IMG/VR virus record: IMGVR_UViG_3300014914_000026
Span: 1-30,061 of that record
Strand: one strand, 5' to 3'
Length of the DNA: 30,061 bases
Below, in pieces: positions 1 through 30,061 of the stretch (position 1 is the first letter of the stretch; every line of letters starts with the position of its first letter). Below the pieces are notes generated by a model. It was given only the letters and a program-made list of their open reading frames with translations. It was not told the DNA's origin and ran no database searches. The position numbers were made by a program, and so were the translations under genes.

Positions 1-123
1 AGCGGATCAGAATGCCTCAAAATACTCGGAGCCATAGACAGAATACTAAGCCTTTTTCCCACAAAGCCATAAGCACCCAACACCAAAAGGCTTAAATACA
101 CCAAACAACACAAAATTTTTTCG
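1..123. repeat. Left inverted terminal repeat (123 bp)
   Basis: Bases 1-123 are the exact reverse complement of 29939-30061; identity ends after ...caaaattttttcg. Confidence 0.97.
83..102 (+). promoter_or_regulatory. Archaeal BRE/TATA promoter inside the left ITR
   Basis: ccaaaaggCTTAAATAcacc with TATA at 92-98, about 37 nt before the ATG at 135; near-identical copy at 18493-18512. Confidence 0.7.
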
Positions 124-134
124 AGGGAAGGGTC

Positions 135-3619: not shown

Positions 3620-4327
3620 TTACATGCTTGTATAGTAGATTATATATACAGCTCCATCTCCTCCTTTCCCTCCATCACCACCACCTGCGTATAGGCTACC
3701 TCCTCCACCTCCACCTCCTGCTCCTGGAGATGAACCAGGTTCTCCTGATTCGCCTTTATCTCCTGTAACAGTCGATCCTCCATCTCCTCCAGATGCTATA
3801 TTGTTGGGTGTGTCAGCTCCTTTTCCTCCCTTGGTGTTCCCTGTTTCTCCTGAACTTCCAGATAGCATCGATATTTCTGAGTTTATAGCATATCCTGAAG
3901 GTGATCCTCCACCACCACCTGCTCCTGCTCCACCACTATTTGCTTTACCTCCTCCACCTCCTGAGCCTCCTCCTGCTGTAAGCCCAAAAGCAGTTGTATC
4001 TCCCCCTGCTGAACCTGGAGAGCCATTTTCATCTACAGCTCCTCCACTTCCTCCACTACCTCCTGCTCCTACTGTTATTGAATATGAAGAACCTGGAGTT
4101 ACTGGAATTCCTCTCGCTATTATAACCGCTCCTGAACCTCCTCCTCCACCACTACTTCCCGCAGATGAAGAACCTCCTCCACCTCCACCTCCTCCACCGC
4201 CTCCTCCAACTATTATTACATCGATTACATGAACGTCTTGTGGTGCTACCCATGTGTATGTTCCAGGTGTTGTAAAGGCATCTACCTTCTTTTTTATTGT
4301 AAACTTGATTGGATGTATTAGGCTCAT
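3620..4327 (-). CDS. Glycine-rich virion/tail-fibre-type protein
   Basis: FTTPGTYTWVAP...VIIVGGGGGGG...VTPGSSYSITVGAGG...GGDGAVYI matches the glycine-rich domain of phage tail proteins. Confidence 0.8.
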   Translation of the reverse strand: MSLIHPIKFTIKKKVDAFTTPGTYTWVAPQDVHVIDVIIVGGGGGGGGGGGGSSSAGSSGGGGGSGAVIIARGIPVTPGSSYSITVGAGGSGGSGGAVDENGSPGSAGGDTTAFGLTAGGGSGGGGGKANSGGAGAGGGGGSPSGYAINSEISMLSGSSGETGNTKGGKGADTPNNIASGGDGGSTVTGDKGESGEPGSSPGAGGGGGGGSLYAGGGDGGKGGDGAVYIIYYTSM

Positions 4328-18492: not shown

Positions 18493-18512
18493 CCAAAAGG
18501 CTTATATAGACC
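18493..18512 (+). promoter_or_regulatory. BRE/TATA promoter of the TopoVIA-like gene
   Basis: ccaaaaggcttatatagacc, 18/20 identical to the ITR promoter; preceded by the palindrome GGACTAGTCC. Confidence 0.7.
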
Positions 18513-19587: not shown

Positions 19588-19612
19588 TATGTGGAAGAGG
19601 TATCAGGCAAAG
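19588..19612. repeat. 25-bp inverted-repeat arm in the capsid 3'UTR (partner at 19942-19966)
   Basis: tatgtggaagaggtatcaggcaaag versus reverse complement of ctttgcctgatacttcttccacata: 24/25. Confidence 0.92.
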
Positions 19613-19617
19613 GATGT

Positions 19618-19992
19618 TTAGTATGGCATCACCCAGCCTGCGATGACCTGTATAATCTCATCGCAGACTGAGGGATCGAGGCCATAGGCGTTCACATAGT
19701 AGCTCTTGAGACCAGAGCTGATCTTCTTGCCAGCATCACCCTTCTGGCGGACTATATGCCTCAGAAGGGCGAGGCCGAAGGCGAGGTAGGTCGCCCTCAT
19801 ACCACCAGTAATGCCATACTCATCGAGGATCGGCCTCACCAAGTCCCTGGCGGTGGCAACCATGTTTAGACCTTCCTGTGCTCTATCGACGGCGATGCTC
19901 TGGACATCCGTGAACCTAGTCCCTATGACGGTGGGGTTGAACTTTGCCTGATACTTCTTCCACATATCCAGACCAGTCTTATAGAGTGGCAT
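19618..19992 (-). CDS. Major capsid protein, SIRV2/Adnaviria fold
   Basis: KYQAKFNPTV...ILDEYGITGGMRATYLAFGL...GLKSYYVNAYGLDPSV..II.VI.G aligns by eye with rudivirus MCP (KWQAKF..NPTV...LTQYGITGPNRAIYQGFGL...GLKGYYISAFNANPQV); GGAGGTGA RBS. Confidence 0.92.
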   Translation of the reverse strand: MPLYKTGLDMWKKYQAKFNPTVIGTRFTDVQSIAVDRAQEGLNMVATARDLVRPILDEYGITGGMRATYLAFGLALLRHIVRQKGDAGKKISSGLKSYYVNAYGLDPSVCDEIIQVIAGWVMPY

Positions 19993-25923: not shown

Positions 25924-26178
25924 ATGGGTAGCATGTATTTTAATGTTAAAAGGAGGAGTATCTTGATTTTTGATGAGAAGACTGGGCGTTTACAATTTTT
26001 AAGGGGTGTTTTAAAGAGTGCTGAGAGGGATGAGTGTATAATTAGGGTTGTTTTGGAGCTTTATTTTATTGATGAGGAAGCAAGTAAGAAGGCTCTTGAA
26101 TATTTGAAGAGGAATCTTGAGAAGTGGTGTGGGGTTTCCCTAAGACCTCCTGAAGCCACCTCTCATAATTCTGAATGA
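25924..26178 (+). CDS. Hypothetical protein
   Basis: 84-aa ORF with GGGTGG RBS. Confidence 0.55.
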   Translation: MGSMYFNVKRRSILIFDEKTGRLQFLRGVLKSAERDECIIRVVLELYFIDEEASKKALEYLKRNLEKWCGVSLRPPEATSHNSE

Positions 26179-26344
26179 CTTTATCCGCTTCTTTTAGTAG
26201 GTCTATGTATAGGGGGTTGGGTGCTTTACATTGAGGACACTTTATTAGTCTTCTGGAATAGACAGCCCTACATCTGGGACATGCTATGAGGTAGAGTAGT
26301 TCCCATGCGGTTTTGAACTCCTCGTTGTCTGAAATCGTCTTCAT
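26066..26344 (-). CDS. Zn-ribbon protein
   Basis: CPRC...CPQC; TATATATA upstream; overlaps the convergent ORF. Confidence 0.6.
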   Translation of the reverse strand: MKTISDNEEFKTAWELLYLIACPRCRAVYSRRLIKCPQCKAPNPLYIDLLKEADKVIQNYERWLQEVLGKPHTTSQDSSSNIQEPSYLLPHQ

Positions 26345-26390
26345 TTTTCCATGTCTGGTTAATGATCACTTTGTATATATATGTTTCTAT

Positions 26391-27008
26391 TTAGAGTTGA
26401 AAGGGTGCTAAGGCGTATATTCTGGTTCTTCTCCCACCCTTATGGGAGCTTGGTTTTGTTCTGACCAGTCGGACTAATTTCTTTTCGATTAGTTGATGAA
26501 TGATTCGATGGGCTGTTGAGTAGGGAATTCCAGTTTTATTGGAAATGTCCTCAATTGAGGCTTCTTTAAGCTCTATGAGGGTTTTTATAACTTTTCTAAT
26601 GTTTGGCCTGAAGAGGAGTTTGAAGACATAGGCTATGTCGCTTGGAGAGTATTTTTCAAAAATTAATAATAGGGTTGAGATTAGAGTTGGGTCGATTGGA
26701 CTGTATATGACATAGTTTTGTGGTTGCTCTCTGACATTTTTTATTGTCAGTTCAGTTGGGTAGTATTTATACTTCTCTCTATGACCAATTATGATTTTTT
26801 CTCTCCATAGTTCACCTTTCTCAACAAGGTAGTTTAGGACTCCTGAAAGTGTTGATTTGGTTACTCTGATTTTATTAATTTTTAATGCTGTCAGTATTTC
26901 GTTGAAGGTGCGTCCTTCCTTTCCCCAGTCTGAGGTCATTAAAGTTCTTATGGCATCTGATACTGTATTATTTGGAGAAATAATGGGGTATATGTTTTGT
27001 TCCTCCAT
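26391..27008 (-). CDS. Tandem double-wHTH transcription regulator
   Basis: RTFNEI...KSTLSGVLNYLVEKGEL and ASIEDISNKTGIPYSTAHRIIHQLIEKKLV...GGRRTRIY. Confidence 0.8.
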   Translation of the reverse strand: MEEQNIYPIISPNNTVSDAIRTLMTSDWGKEGRTFNEILTALKINKIRVTKSTLSGVLNYLVEKGELWREKIIIGHREKYKYYPTELTIKNVREQPQNYVIYSPIDPTLISTLLLIFEKYSPSDIAYVFKLLFRPNIRKVIKTLIELKEASIEDISNKTGIPYSTAHRIIHQLIEKKLVRLVRTKPSSHKGGRRTRIYALAPFQL

Positions 27009-27011
27009 GTT

Positions 27012-27221
27012 TTACACCTTGTAGAATTTTCCGTCTTTCTCTTCTACTAAGCCAGCTAATCTGAATTGCTTTATGTATTCTTTGACTCTCCTTGGAGACA
27101 GCCCTATCTTCCATCCTGCGAGTGCTTCCAGTTTCTCCAGGGTGATTCCGTCTTTAGGTATGAGGTCTAAGAGCATCCGCATATACACCTGTCTTATCCG
27201 TGCTCCTCCCTTGGCGGACAT
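27012..27221 (-). CDS. Small wHTH protein
   Basis: Start reassigned to MSAKGG; GLSPRRVKEYIKQFRLAGLVEEKDGKFY; TATA-like TTTATATA about 30 nt upstream. Confidence 0.7.
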   Translation of the reverse strand: MSAKGGARIRQVYMRMLLDLIPKDGITLEKLEALAGWKIGLSPRRVKEYIKQFRLAGLVEEKDGKFYKV

Positions 27222-27285
27222 CCCATGAGTTGTGGGGGAGTGAGAGTATATAAATGTAACTGTGAGTGTGTGTAAGAGTCCCCTG

Positions 27286-27346
27286 TATAATATATTATAT
27301 ACCCAAGTTTTGTAATACAATAAAAGGTTATTGTAATACAAAACTT
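27286..27346. promoter_or_regulatory. AT-rich palindromic element (operator or replication-site candidate)
   Basis: Palindrome TATAATATATTATA (27286-27299); 18-bp inverted repeat 27305-27322/27329-27346 (17/18) containing two TTGTAATACAA boxes 21 bp apart. Confidence 0.6.
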
Positions 27347-27391
27347 CGTTCATTCAAATTTATGGGGGGACACTTATACACATATTCATAC

Positions 27392-27856
27392 TTATACACA
27401 CTTTCTCGCAATTCTGTAGGTCTCCAAGTCGTCGATTATAAGCTTCACACCATGATTGTTTAACCATTTGACAACTCTTAAAGATACTTCATGGGTGAGT
27501 TTCTTATCTTTTATTTCTTTATTCACTTCGTGAACTATTGTAGTCCATCTTACTCTCTTTTCAGGTATTCCTCTCCAATATGTAACTTTGACTTTCTTTA
27601 ATAATCTCTTCCCAATTTGAGCTATAAGGACTCTTAAGCCTCTCCTGTTCCAATCAATATATTCAACTAAAGATGTCTGCTCCTTAAACAACCCATGATT
27701 CTTTAGAAATTCTCTTATGGCTTTTAGAATTACATCTGTTCTACTGGTTTTATTAAGTTCAGCATAGTAATCCAAAGCAGAGATAAGATACAATTCTTCC
27801 AAAGGGACTTTAAATGTTATAACTCTCCAGCTATCATATTTCCTTGGGCGAGGCAT
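27392..27856 (-). CDS. RHH-domain regulator with extra C-terminal domain
   Basis: VITFKVPLEELYLISALDYYAELNKTSRTDVILKAIREFL; GAGGTGA RBS. Confidence 0.8.
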   Translation of the reverse strand: MPRPRKYDSWRVITFKVPLEELYLISALDYYAELNKTSRTDVILKAIREFLKNHGLFKEQTSLVEYIDWNRRGLRVLIAQIGKRLLKKVKVTYWRGIPEKRVRWTTIVHEVNKEIKDKKLTHEVSLRVVKWLNNHGVKLIIDDLETYRIARKCV

Positions 27857-27861
27857 CTATT

Positions 27862-27978
27862 CCTCACCTCTTCCTCCACTAAGCTAATCAGAACAAAGCC
27901 CTTATAAAAGTTTAGAGGGGCTAGGGAGGAAGAGGTGAGGGAGATCGGATTTCCTATACTTTTACTAGCCCCTCTAAA
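27862..27978. repeat. Two interleaved perfect inverted repeats (16 bp and 14 bp)
   Basis: cctcacctcttcctcc 27862-27877 / ggaggaagaggtgagg 27925-27940; tttagaggggctag 27911-27924 / ctagcccctctaaa 27965-27978. Confidence 0.9.
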
Positions 27979-28080
27979 TTGACATCTGTAGTGATGAATA
28001 TAAATGTTACTCAAAGAAGGTGTCATAAGCCTTAAATACATCCTATCGGGAGAATAGAACGAATGGAGGTGTAGAGATAT

Positions 28081-28251
28081 ATGCCATGCCCCTTCATGCT
28101 TATCTGTAAACAAAAGGTGGATTTTGAGAAATACCGCAAATATTGTAGCTCTATGACAGGAAAATATAGATTATGCCCCGAATATGAAAAACTATCATCT
28201 GAATATAAAACACCAAGGGAATGGAATGAGCTAATCAGCGGGAGGGAGTAA
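28081..28251 (+). CDS. Small 4-Cys protein (56 aa, not in ORF track)
   Basis: MPCPFMLICKQKVDFEKYRKYCSSMTGKYRLCPEYEKLSSEYKTPREWNELISGRE; GGAGGTG RBS; cttaaata TATA at ~28031; T-run after the stop. Confidence 0.7.
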   Translation: MPCPFMLICKQKVDFEKYRKYCSSMTGKYRLCPEYEKLSSEYKTPREWNELISGRE

Positions 28252-28343
28252 CCCGCCACTTCCCTTTTTTTAGAGAGGTGTTAGGGGCTATAGGCGTAAG
28301 ACTTATATATGTGCTGTTCCCTAACACCTATTGGGTGATAAAA

Positions 28344-28766
28344 GTGGAAGAAGTGGTTGAGGCTCTTCCCCGACATTATGCTGTTTTGAGGAATAGGGTA
28401 ATAGAATCCCTAAATGAGGCCATAGAATCCCTAACACAGATAGACGCAGAGATGGAAAAGATAAACAAGCAAATTGAGGACTTGTCCTCCAACATCCGCT
28501 ACGGCTACCTCGAATACAAGTGGGTTCTAAACAAGATAAAGCAGAAGTATTGGTATTGGTATCTCAGAAAGAGGGAAAACGGAAAGCTAAGGAGCATCTA
28601 TATCGGCAAACACATCCCAAAACACCTAATAGAAGGAATAAACAACAGGAGACAACTAGAATCACTAGCAAAAAGGCTTGAAGAACTCGACGAAGAAAAA
28701 GAAAGAAAAATCCAGCATATATACAACGCTATAAGGGAGCTTCAAAAAGCTTCCATCACCCTCTAA
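28344..28766 (+). CDS. Coiled-coil protein with a three-stranded DNA-binding-like module
   Basis: GYLEYKWV...YWYWYLRKRENGKLRSIYIGK flanked by heptads; start reassigned to GTG 28344 (GGGTGA RBS, TATA at ~28303). Confidence 0.65.
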   Translation: MEEVVEALPRHYAVLRNRVIESLNEAIESLTQIDAEMEKINKQIEDLSSNIRYGYLEYKWVLNKIKQKYWYWYLRKRENGKLRSIYIGKHIPKHLIEGINNRRQLESLAKRLEELDEEKERKIQHIYNAIRELQKASITL

Positions 28767-28842
28767 TTTTTTAAACTCTCTTCTCTCAACCACAAAAAAT
28801 ATAAATAATTTCTCAAAAAACATTCAAGGGGTGGAAAAGGGG

Positions 28843-29085
28843 ATGTCCTATAACCTGGTTCCCGTAGATGGAATACCCAAGAGAAGAGTTCAGCGGAGAA
28901 GCAAGTATGACGACATCATCGACGACTTCCTAAACCAGAACCTAAAGTATGCCAGACTTGACATCGATGCCACCAACCTTGATTATATCAGAACACAGAT
29001 ATACAAGCGAATCAAGGCGAGAGGTCTAACCGACCACATTAAGATAGTTAGGAGAGGTAGTAACCTCTATCTGGTAAGACTTTAA
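28843..29085 (+). CDS. Small basic hypothetical protein (possible DNA binding)
   Basis: RSKYDDIIDDFL...YIRTQIYKRIKARGL...LYLVR; followed by a T-run. Confidence 0.65.
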   Translation: MSYNLVPVDGIPKRRVQRRSKYDDIIDDFLNQNLKYARLDIDATNLDYIRTQIYKRIKARGLTDHIKIVRRGSNLYLVRL

Positions 29086-29100
29086 AATCCCCAATTTTTT

Positions 29101-29412
29101 TTATGAAAAGAAGGGAAGTATATCTTCAGATAAATCTATCTCCAGGATTTTAATTAGCGGTATTATCATCCCCTCTCTTCTACCGAATTCATAGGCTGTT
29201 TTGATGATCCTGCCAGCATTAGCCTCCCCTATCACAGACAGCAACACTCCCTTATCAGTCTCTATGAATACCCAGCAACTAAGAATTCTCTGAGACAATA
29301 TAAATCTCTCATTCTCCTCGCTAAAGACTTTCTCGCCATCACTATGCCTAAAAGCCAAAATATACTCAACCAACTCTCTTACCTTCTCCTTTAAACTCTC
29401 TTCTGACATCAA
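29101..29412 (-). CDS. Hypothetical protein
   Basis: 103 aa; GGAGGTG RBS; coupled to the upstream gene. Confidence 0.65.
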   Translation of the reverse strand: MMSEESLKEKVRELVEYILAFRHSDGEKVFSEENERFILSQRILSCWVFIETDKGVLLSVIGEANAGRIIKTAYEFGRREGMIIPLIKILEIDLSEDILPFFS

Positions 29413-29774
29413 AGCACCTCCGCTAGTTCATCCACTATCCAGTATCCCTCAAACACTTTGAAATCCTCCTTTTTCAGTTTTTCTACAATATTCTCAAACA
29501 ATGATTTGATCTCATTCTGCTTCTTCTCGTCTGAATCGATAAAAATTCTTTGACCTAAATCTCTTTTCCACATTACTATGCTATCAGGAAAACCATCGTA
29601 TGTAGTATCCATAATTCCTGTAACTATCAGGAACTTATGTCCAATATAATGTCTATGTTCACCCTCTCCGTATGGAACACCCATGTTTATTATGCTTACA
29701 CCTACTGGATAGAACTTCTTAGCCAGCTTTATGAAATCCTCAAGTTTAAGAACTCTAAATACTGGCTGAATCAT
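29409..29774 (-). CDS. Hypothetical protein
   Basis: 121 aa; GAGGTGGGAGG RBS. Confidence 0.7.
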   Translation of the reverse strand: MIQPVFRVLKLEDFIKLAKKFYPVGVSIINMGVPYGEGEHRHYIGHKFLIVTGIMDTTYDGFPDSIVMWKRDLGQRIFIDSDEKKQNEIKSLFENIVEKLKKEDFKVFEGYWIVDELAEVL

Positions 29775-29929
29775 CCTCCCACCTCTTCACAGCCTTCAAT
29801 TAAATAATGGTAGTATATTGTTATATCATTTTTCTTCTCATCTTTCAGCATCTTCATTAAAGTTTTTACGATCCTACGGTATGGTAGTGGTCTATCGCTA
29901 GTTATATTAATTTCAAGCCTATATGCCAT
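29771..29929 (-). CDS. Small hypothetical protein (52 aa, not in ORF track), first gene from the right ITR promoter
   Basis: MAYRLEINITSDRPLPYRRIVKTLMKMLKDEKKNDITIYYHYLIEGCEEVGG; ATG 133 nt from the right end; ATGA overlap with the next gene. Confidence 0.65.
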   Translation of the reverse strand: MAYRLEINITSDRPLPYRRIVKTLMKMLKDEKKNDITIYYHYLIEGCEEVGG

Positions 29930-29938
29930 GTCTATCCC

Positions 29939-30061
29939 CGAAAAAATTTTGTGTTGTTTGGTGTATTTAAGCCTTTTGGTGTTGGGTGCTTATGGCTTTG
30001 TGGGAAAAAGGCTTAGTATTCTGTCTATGGCTCCGAGTATTTTGAGGCATTCTGATCCGCT
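29939..30061. repeat. Right inverted terminal repeat (123 bp)
   Basis: Exact reverse complement of 1-123. Confidence 0.97.

What the first reader, a model, noticed from the sequence alone, without database searches (positions are those of the whole stretch)
27856..28005. Interleaved 14-bp and 16-bp perfect stems (H-type pseudoknot topology) covering the RBS of the RHH regulator
Seen: on the minus strand the order is A (27978-27965), B (27940-27925), A' (27924-27911), B' (27877-27862), then 5 nt to the ATG. B' contains the RBS GAGGTGA, and B and A' abut with no spacer, the coaxial geometry of an H-type pseudoknot. Both stems exceed one helical turn, so they are probably mutually exclusive. A TATA-like element (cttataaaag, 27901-27910) lies between A' and B', and another (catttatattc on minus, ~27995-28005) upstream of A. 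Inference: a long transcript forms an anti-RBS/anti-anti-RBS switch while a short one from the inner promoter has a free RBS. Alternatively the inner TATA fires both ways and makes a + strand small RNA that begins with the same 16-nt leader (decoy). Either would be an undescribed genetic switch.
Basis: partly seen in the sequence, partly recalled or inferred. Interest (0 to 1): 0.8.

Follow-up and report, generated by a model that had tools for sequence, protein, structure and literature searches.

The report
Interleaved repeats at viral regulator promoter
Two perfect, interleaved inverted repeats sit on the promoter and ribosome-binding site of a repressor-like gene in an orphan rod-shaped archaeal virus; they are far beyond chance and most likely repressor binding sites, but an RNA-leader switch is not excluded.

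Summary
The 16/16 repeat (27862-77 / 27925-40) and the 14/14 repeat (27911-24 / 27965-78) are the only inverted repeats of 13 nt or more within 200 nt in the 30-kb genome, and they interleave as described.

The window is a complete linear genome with 126-bp terminal repeats, from a divergent rudivirus-like archaeal virus.

By position, A' abuts the inner TATA, where the BRE (TFB-recognition element) lies. B' starts at the inner promoter's predicted start site and carries the Shine-Dalgarno (SD) sequence. A covers the predicted start site of an outer promoter-like motif.

The A-box core occurs a third time, without a partner, beside another TATA in the same intergenic region.

The only relative (32% identical regulator, 1-kb contig) keeps the inner promoter. 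It has an ~8-nt leader and no B-like repeat.

The two stems share no nucleotides, so this is not a classical anti/anti-anti-RBS toggle. The proposed plus-strand decoy RNA does not fit TATA-to-start spacing.

Best reading (about 0.4): a compound operator for autoregulation of the ribbon-helix-helix (RHH) regulator operon. Main rival (about 0.3): a long leader from the outer promoter whose B-B' helix hides the SD. No covariation test is possible and no transcript data exist.

The parts
27965..27978 (-). Arm A (reads TTTAGAGGGGCTAG on the minus strand). It covers the predicted start site of the outer promoter-like motif.
   Evidence: start-site position inferred from the TATA spacing calibrated on the wHTH leaderless promoter
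27925..27940 (-). Arm B, pyrimidine-rich on the minus strand and complementary to the SD-containing B'. It lies at about -61 to -46 of the inner promoter.
27911..27924 (-). Arm A'. It directly abuts the inner TATA and so occupies the BRE position.
27902..27909 (-). Inner TATA box (TTTTATAA on the minus strand). It is homologous in position to the RHH-gene TATA of the relative L007. On the plus strand it also reads as a promoter-like AAGCCCTTATAAA.
27862..27877 (-). Arm B' (GGAGGAAGAGGTGAGG). It starts at about +1 to +3 of the inner promoter and contains the SD GAGGTGA (27870-27864), 5 nt before the ATG.
27996..28007 (-). Outer promoter-like motif (ACATTTATAT plus two bases), an exact 10-mer copy of the wHTH gene's promoter at 27248-27257.
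27392..27856 (-). 154-aa RHH-like regulator, first gene of an operon of three DNA-binding proteins (RHH, a 69-aa wHTH protein, and a 205-aa TrmB/MarR-like wHTH protein).
28281..28290 (+). Third A-box-like copy (TTAGGGGCTA; the core AGGGGCTA occurs only three times in the genome, all in this intergenic region).
28276..28329 (+). An 11-nt perfect inverted repeat (28276-86 / 28319-29) bracketing a TATA at 28303-28310 of the 162-aa gene. Both arms lie upstream of that gene's predicted start site.
   Evidence: By count alone this repeat is compatible with chance.
28023..28042 (+). Promoter motif of the virus's recurrent type (also present in both terminal repeats and at 18493-18512), placed to drive the divergent 56-aa Cys-rich gene (28081-28251).

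Best explanation
The four arms are double-stranded-DNA operator boxes of a compound control region for the RHH-wHTH-wHTH regulator operon. One box type (B) sits on the transcription start and leader of the homologous, proximal promoter, with a second inverted copy 63 bp upstream. The other box type (A) sits on the BRE next to the proximal TATA, with an inverted copy 54 bp upstream on the start site of a second, distal promoter. Virus-encoded regulators would occupy these boxes; the likeliest candidates are the RHH protein itself and one of the two wHTH proteins of the operon. Occupied boxes would exclude TBP/TFB (the TATA-binding protein and transcription factor B) and RNA polymerase. The repressors possibly bridge the paired boxes so that the TATA is held in a small loop. 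The result would be negative autoregulation of both promoters. Shown here: the repeats, their positions relative to TATA elements, and the third A-box. Inferred: start sites, protein binding and looping.
For: 1. A' abuts the inner TATA. B' begins at the start site predicted from the same-motif leaderless wHTH promoter (36 nt from motif start to ATG). A covers the predicted outer start site.
2. The inner promoter aligns with the RHH promoter of the only relative, so it is the ancestral, working promoter. B therefore lies upstream of that promoter, outside its transcript.
3. The A-box core AGGGGCTA occurs three times in 30 kb, all within this 421-bp region. The third copy has no complementary partner and lies 12 nt from another TATA. 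About 0.013 extra copies are expected in a region this size.
4. The full 14-bp A complementarity extends 4-7 bp beyond the predicted outer start site. RNA pairing does not explain this.
5. Centre-to-centre spacings of 63 and 54 bp are close to 6 and 5 helical turns (sequence; inference).
6. The same module carries other classic operator-like features. There are two exact 11-bp palindromes 21 bp apart. There is also an inverted repeat with one arm on the RHH stop codon and the other just upstream of the wHTH TATA. That repeat recurs at the same relative positions, with a different sequence, in the relative (13/13 perfect). In the relative a T6 terminator lies between its arms.
7. Precedent: archaeal viral and plasmid RHH proteins (SvtR, AvtR, F55, pRN1 ORF56) bind repeats in their own promoters, with F55 sites overlapping the BRE and the start site (PMC5569661, PMC3869888). 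Inverted repeats overlapping the BRE have been proposed as repressor sites in other archaeal viruses (PMC11065993).
Against: Known RHH operators are short, with contiguous or near-contiguous subsites. Here each arm is a 14-16-bp non-palindromic box and the partners are 40-47 bp apart. Perfect 16/16 and 14/14 identity is more than protein recognition normally requires, and fits base-pairing selection or a recent origin better. No other A or B boxes occur elsewhere in the genome. No binding data exist. The AlphaFold model of the regulator was unusable (pLDDT 39), so nothing supports a tetramerising or looping domain. The third inverted repeat (11 nt) is within chance expectation by count. The outer promoter probably does produce an RNA containing B and B', so an RNA effect may coexist.
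Confidence: 0.4

Rival explanations
1. RNA leader control. The outer promoter makes a leader of about 115-120 nt in which B pairs with B' and buries the Shine-Dalgarno sequence of the RHH gene. The inner promoter makes a leader of about 21-23 nt with a free SD. A-A' adds a 5'-proximal helix. It could stack coaxially on B-B' as an H-type pseudoknot, or protect the 5' end.
For: The outer motif is an exact copy of a bona fide leaderless promoter, and the motif class is enriched (10 matches against 4.5 expected). No T-run of 5 or more lies between it and the gene. B-B' is stable at host-like temperatures: -30.5, -12.7 and -8.0 kcal/mol at 37, 75 and 85 C. The short transcript has only a weak local hairpin, -3.2 kcal/mol at 75 C. 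The loops of 24 and 33 nt are long enough for a pseudoknot. A rough Dirks-Pierce estimate puts the pseudoknot about level in energy with the nested minimum-free-energy (MFE) fold (the estimate is inference). All 30 pairs are Watson-Crick. Zero spacing between B and A' suits coaxial stacking.
Against: The stems share no bases, so there is no alternative-pairing switch. The predicted outer start site removes 4-7 nt of A. The only relative has no leader structure. A third, unpaired A-box lies next to another TATA. Structured 5' leaders are not an established regulatory mode in Sulfolobales-type hosts, where most mRNAs are leaderless (established knowledge). There is no Rfam match; only sub-threshold miRNA-hairpin hits appear. 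The z-score of the minus-strand fold is modest at -2.2.
Confidence: 0.3
2. By-product of replication errors, namely two fold-back template switches or inverted micro-duplications, with no selected function.
For: The arms are perfect and have sharp boundaries. B' spans the junction between sequence conserved with the relative and a 17-nt stretch that only this virus has, so B looks like a copy of the leader. The feature is not shared by the relative or by SMRV1 or SIRV2.
Against: It needs two independent events in 117 bp, because the order b' then a' is not what a single fold-back copy would give. The arms land on the BRE, the start site and the SD rather than at random. The sequence is identical in four assemblies from different runs, although these may be one strain.
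Confidence: 0.1
3. A structure in single-stranded DNA, such as a displaced strand during rudivirus-type replication. It would serve as a priming, origin or recombination signal, or as a site-specific inversion switch of the TATA-bearing 47-bp segment.
For: Rudiviruses replicate through extensive single-stranded intermediates (established knowledge). The pRN1 origin is a stem-loop with a 58-nt loop (PMC3869888). The plus strand folds slightly better than the minus strand, -45.3 against -41.7 kcal/mol for the same window. The interleaved order b-a-b'-a' is formally that of engineered double-inverted recombination switches.
Against: The plus strand's G and T richness explains the strand asymmetry. 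The cumulative GC-skew maximum is at about 27.0 kb, not at the element, and the purine-skew minimum at 27880 simply marks the switch in gene orientation. Segments of 40-47 bp are too short for known invertases. All four assemblies have one orientation. No recombinase gene lies nearby.
Confidence: 0.07

Closest known systems
Autoregulatory operators of archaeal viral and plasmid RHH repressors (SSV1 F55, SIRV1 SvtR, AFV6 AvtR, pRN1 ORF56/CopG)
   Same: An RHH-like gene lies directly downstream. Repeated boxes overlap the BRE and the start site of its own promoter. There are multiple sites in one control region (PMC5569661, PMC3869888). The N-terminus matches ORF56 weakly.
   Different: Known sites are imperfect 16-22-bp inverted repeats or 8-11-bp tandem repeats with adjacent subsites. 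Here two different perfect boxes have partners 40-47 bp apart and are interleaved. The protein is 154 aa with an uncharacterised C-terminal half.
Aca2-type dual control of anti-CRISPR operons (HTH repressor binding a promoter inverted repeat and hairpins in the 5' UTR)
   Same: A small virus-encoded regulator sits in a control region where inverted repeats lie both on the promoter and on the RBS-containing leader (PMC13551039).
   Different: It is a bacterial phage system with an HTH protein rather than an RHH protein. Its short local hairpins are not long-range interleaved stems. No anti-defence gene has been identified here.
H-type RNA pseudoknots and anti-SD sequestering leaders (for example bacterial translational operators and RNA thermometers)
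   Same: The order is S1-S2-S1'-S2' with zero nucleotides between S2 and S1'. One stem covers the SD.
   Different: The stems are 14 and 16 bp, against the usual 3-8 bp. The loops contain a working TATA box. There is no family match, no covariation and no evidence for the transcript.
Repressor-mediated DNA loops that enclose a promoter (gal, ara and lac type)
   Same: Paired identical sites flank a core promoter at integral helical turns (63 and 54 bp).
   Different: Those systems are bacterial and their loops are usually 90 bp or more. No such loop has been described for an archaeal virus. Looping here is pure inference.

Membership tests
RHH-repressor autoregulatory operator | An RHH-fold DNA-binding protein is encoded by the regulated gene | tested here: met
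   phrog_876 E=1.3e-5. PDB 2k9i ORF56 E=0.0065 over residues 3-58. No Pfam hit, so support is weak but consistent.
RHH-repressor autoregulatory operator | Repeated boxes overlap the core promoter elements (BRE, TATA, start site) of the gene | tested here: met
   A' abuts the TATA and B' begins at the predicted start site. Start sites are inferred, not measured.
RHH-repressor autoregulatory operator | Subsites are adjacent, within one or two helical turns, so that dimers bind cooperatively | tested here: not met
   The partner arms are 40 and 47 bp apart, and each arm lacks internal dyad symmetry.
RHH-repressor autoregulatory operator | The protein binds the boxes specifically | not testable with these tools
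   Needs gel-shift or footprinting experiments.
H-type RNA pseudoknot / anti-SD leader | Interleaved stems with loops long enough to span them | tested here: met
   The order is A, B, A', B' with loops of 24, 0 and 33 nt.
H-type RNA pseudoknot / anti-SD leader | All four arms lie in one transcript | tested here: inconclusive
   The outer promoter-like motif is credible, but its predicted start site lies 4-7 nt inside A. No transcript data exist.
H-type RNA pseudoknot / anti-SD leader | The pairing is conserved or covaries in relatives | tested here: not met
   Only one relative exists among 1.8 billion representative proteins. Its leader is about 8 nt with no B-like repeat. Three other assemblies are identical, so they carry no information.
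Alternative-pairing riboswitch-like toggle (anti / anti-anti RBS) | The competing helices share nucleotides | tested here: not met
   A/A' and B/B' occupy disjoint positions.
Curated RNA families (Rfam 15) | A match at gathering score | tested here: not met
   Only miRNA-hairpin chance hits at 24.5 bits or less, against thresholds of 49-230.
Invertible promoter switch | Both orientations are present in populations, with a recombinase nearby and a segment long enough to invert | tested here: not met
   Four assemblies share one orientation. The segments are 40-47 bp. No recombinase gene is adjacent.
MITE / mobile-element insertion | Other copies elsewhere, with terminal repeats flanked by a target duplication | tested here: not met
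   No other A or B copy within 1 mismatch in the genome. No match in the phage or plasmid collections.

The most novel reading that the evidence does not exclude
The repeats act as nucleic-acid structure. In a long leader RNA from the outer promoter, a 16-bp anti-SD helix stacked on a 5'-proximal helix would form a giant H-type pseudoknot that sets translation of the viral RHH regulator. The regulator might recognise the same sequences both as DNA boxes and as RNA helices, as Aca2 does. This would be the first structured-leader translational switch described for a virus of hyperthermophilic Thermoproteota.
Probability: 0.2. Interest if true: 0.75.

Novelty: new variant of a known kind. Interest (0 to 1): 0.42.

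Why it matters
Transcription control in archaeal viruses is known from only a handful of regulators. None of them has a control region built from two interleaved, perfect, long-spaced repeat pairs placed on the BRE, the start site and the SD.

If these are operators, the region offers a compact natural test bed for repression, and possibly DNA looping, at a TBP/TFB promoter at high temperature. If it is an RNA structure, it would be a rare example of leader-based translational control in a lineage thought to rely mostly on leaderless mRNAs.

The present weight is limited. The element is known from one viral lineage and nothing about it has been measured.

Tried and rejected
**Searches for relatives that found nothing useful**
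- Nucleotide searches of 26000-30061 against the phage and plasmid collections found nothing.
- Protein-anchored scans of IMG/VR with the RHH, 205-aa and 162-aa proteins, and with a wHTH alignment, returned only the window itself. So did one JGI metagenome scan.
- Word-based searches of 5.8 billion proteins with the RHH and wHTH proteins gave only self and one relative.
- A full HMMER search of 1.84 billion representatives gave one full-length relative (P0002) and one N-terminal-only hit (P0003). P0003 sits in a non-comparable context as an internal gene of a different operon.

**Tests that gave no information**
- Covariation could not be tested. The three other assemblies carrying the gene are 100% identical over the intergenic region.
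- The AlphaFold2 model of the regulator had pLDDT 39, so no fold search was attempted.
- No Rfam family matched.

**Ideas dropped**
- Strand asymmetry: mismatches flanking or inside the repeats are G-T on the plus strand. I dropped this because the plus strand is generally G- and T-rich.
- Replication origin: the GC-skew maximum is at about 27.0 kb, and the purine-skew minimum only marks the switch in gene orientation.
- A general rudivirus trait: SMRV1 has no perfect inverted repeat of 11 nt or more within 200 nt, and SIRV2 has only AT-rich ones.
- Weak candidate equivalents of the A repeat in L007 (8-nt 1-8/47-54, and about 10 nt with 2 mismatches) are not above chance.
- No pseudoknot-aware folding program was available. 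Only a rough energy estimate was made.

Full report
**What the window is**

The 30,061-bp window is a whole contig, IMGVR_UViG_3300014914_000026. It has 126-bp inverted terminal repeats. Its 124-aa protein is 35-40% identical to rudivirus major coat proteins and carries Pfam Sulf_coat_C. It also has glycosyltransferases, an FkbM-type methyltransferase and large DUF2341-type fibre proteins. It is therefore the complete linear genome of a divergent rudivirus-like virus of a thermoacidophilic archaeon. No nucleotide-level relatives exist in the phage or plasmid collections.

**Checking the observation**

Both repeats are exactly as described: 27862-77/27925-40 (16/16) and 27911-24/27965-78 (14/14). 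They are interleaved, with B and A' abutting.

- They are the only inverted repeats of 13 nt or more within 200 nt in the genome.
- Dinucleotide shuffles give 0.04 14-mer inverted-repeat seeds per genome, against 4 observed.
- B' contains GAGGTGA and ends 5 nt before the ATG of a 154-aa protein.
- That protein's N-terminus is weakly RHH-like: phrog_876 E=1.3e-5 and pRN1 ORF56 E=0.0065.
- The gene heads an operon with two wHTH proteins.

**Promoter anatomy**

Upstream regions of this virus's genes and the repeat families show its own promoter types.

- The motif ACATTTATAT occurs exactly twice. One copy, at 27257-27248, lies 36 nt from the ATG (27221) of the 69-aa wHTH gene and is therefore a leaderless promoter.
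- Carrying the 36-nt spacing over places the outer start site at about 27971-27974, which is 4-7 nt inside arm A.
- The inner TATA (27909-27902) aligns with the TATA of the only relative's RHH gene.
- The same calibration puts the inner start site at 27876-27879, the first bases of B'.
- A' occupies the BRE position directly upstream of that TATA. B lies further upstream, at about -61 to -46.
- On the plus strand the inner TATA also reads as a promoter-like AAGCCCTTATAAA. B begins only 15 nt after it, so a plus-strand start site would fall inside B, and no start codon follows. This argues against the 'decoy RNA with the same leader' idea.

**Relatives**

Exhaustive searches found one full-length homologue of the regulator, P0002, at 32% identity. 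It lies on a 1,058-bp metagenome contig, L007.

- Synteny is kept: RHH, then a wHTH protein 68% identical to the window's, then the N-terminus of a small Cys-rich protein matching the window's ORF at 28081-28251.
- L007's RHH gene has its TATA 30 nt from the ATG. It has no SD and no repeat complementary to its leader.
- Relative to L007, the window has 17 extra leader nucleotides that supply the SD. B' spans the junction, so B looks like a derived copy of the leader.
- Three further assemblies carrying the identical protein are 100% identical across the intergenic region.
- Covariation therefore cannot be assessed.

**Evidence for a DNA-level role**

- The A-box core AGGGGCTA occurs three times in the genome, all in this 421-bp region. 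The third copy (28283-28290) has no partner and lies 12 nt from another TATA at 28303-28310.
- The 14-bp A complementarity extends past the predicted outer start site.
- The arm centres are 63 and 54 bp apart, close to 6 and 5 helical turns.
- The adjacent RHH-wHTH spacer has two exact 11-bp palindromes 21 bp apart.
- That spacer also has an inverted repeat with one arm on the RHH stop codon and the other 11 nt upstream of the wHTH TATA.
- L007 has a perfect 13-nt repeat at the same relative positions with a different sequence, separated by a T6 terminator.
- Literature precedent comes from F55, SvtR, AvtR and ORF56 binding their own promoters (PMC5569661, PMC3869888). BRE-overlapping inverted repeats have also been proposed as repressor sites in other archaeal viruses (PMC11065993).

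**Evidence for an RNA-level role**

- The outer promoter is credible, and no strong terminator lies between it and the gene.
- B-B' alone is worth -30.5, -12.7 and -8.0 kcal/mol at 37, 75 and 85 C. A-A' is worth -21.5, -8.0 and -4.5.
- The short transcript's SD is nearly free at 75 C.
- From the duplex energies and a standard pseudoknot penalty, I estimate the pseudoknot to be about level in energy with the nested MFE fold of -48.9 kcal/mol.
- Against this, the two helices share no bases, so there is no toggle. The minus-strand z-score is only -2.2, and Rfam has nothing.

**Verdict**

The feature is real and clearly non-random, and it sits on the control elements of a regulator gene.

| Reading | Probability |
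|---|---|
| Compound operator | about 0.4 |
| SD-sequestering long leader | about 0.3 |
| Mutational by-product | about 0.1 |
| Single-stranded DNA, replication or inversion signal | about 0.07 |

A dual DNA and RNA mechanism of the Aca2 kind (PMC13551039) remains possible.

The decisive experiments are start-site mapping, footprinting, and double-arm compensatory mutants in a reporter.

Noticed in passing
window 19588-19612 and 19942-19966: A 25-nt inverted repeat (24/25) brackets the major coat protein gene (19618-19992, minus strand). One arm lies in codons about 9-17 and the other 6 nt after the stop codon. In the mRNA this would close almost the whole coding sequence in a panhandle. It is far beyond chance for this genome.
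   Followed up: partly
window 27310-27320 and 27331-27341: Two exact copies of the 11-bp palindrome TTGTAATACAA lie 21 bp apart, between the RHH stop codon and the wHTH promoter. They have the look of a classic dimer operator pair, and they also fold as a 17-bp hairpin. No other copy occurs in the genome.
   Followed up: partly
window 27266-27276 / 27391-27401; L007 554-566 / 658-670 and 540-553 / 689-702: In both viruses an inverted repeat links the RHH stop-codon region with the sequence just upstream of the wHTH TATA. The window's is 10/11 and L007's is 13/13 perfect plus a 14-nt 93% outer pair. The sequences differ, so position is conserved with compensated changes.
   Followed up: partly
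window 27012-27353 and 28278-28766: Two ORF starts are probably too far upstream. By homology with L007's 73-aa protein, the 113-aa ORF most likely starts at the ATG at 27221 (69 aa) behind its own leaderless promoter. The 162-aa ORF probably starts at the in-frame GTG at 28335, just after a TATA at 28303-28310.
   Followed up: partly
window 28081-28251 (+); L007 1015-1058: An uncalled 56-aa Cys-rich ORF (MPCPF...C...) has a good SD and promoter. Its N-terminus is conserved in the relative's contig, though in a different position relative to the operon. It is likely a real small gene, possibly zinc-binding.
   Followed up: no
window 1-126 / 29936-30061; 83-102, 18493-18512, 28023-28042, 29960-29979: The 126-bp inverted terminal repeats (99%) show that the contig is a complete linear genome. 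A 20-nt promoter-like motif (CCAAAAGGCTTAAATACACC type) recurs in both terminal repeats and before two internal genes. It may be an early-gene regulatory sequence of the kind described for rudiviruses (PMC11065993).
   Followed up: no
window 3620-4327 (-): A 235-aa ORF is built from CCTCC-type repeats on the plus strand, with 19 of the family's 26 degenerate 27-nt copies inside it. This implies a Gly-rich, low-complexity protein next to a transglutaminase-like gene.
   Followed up: no
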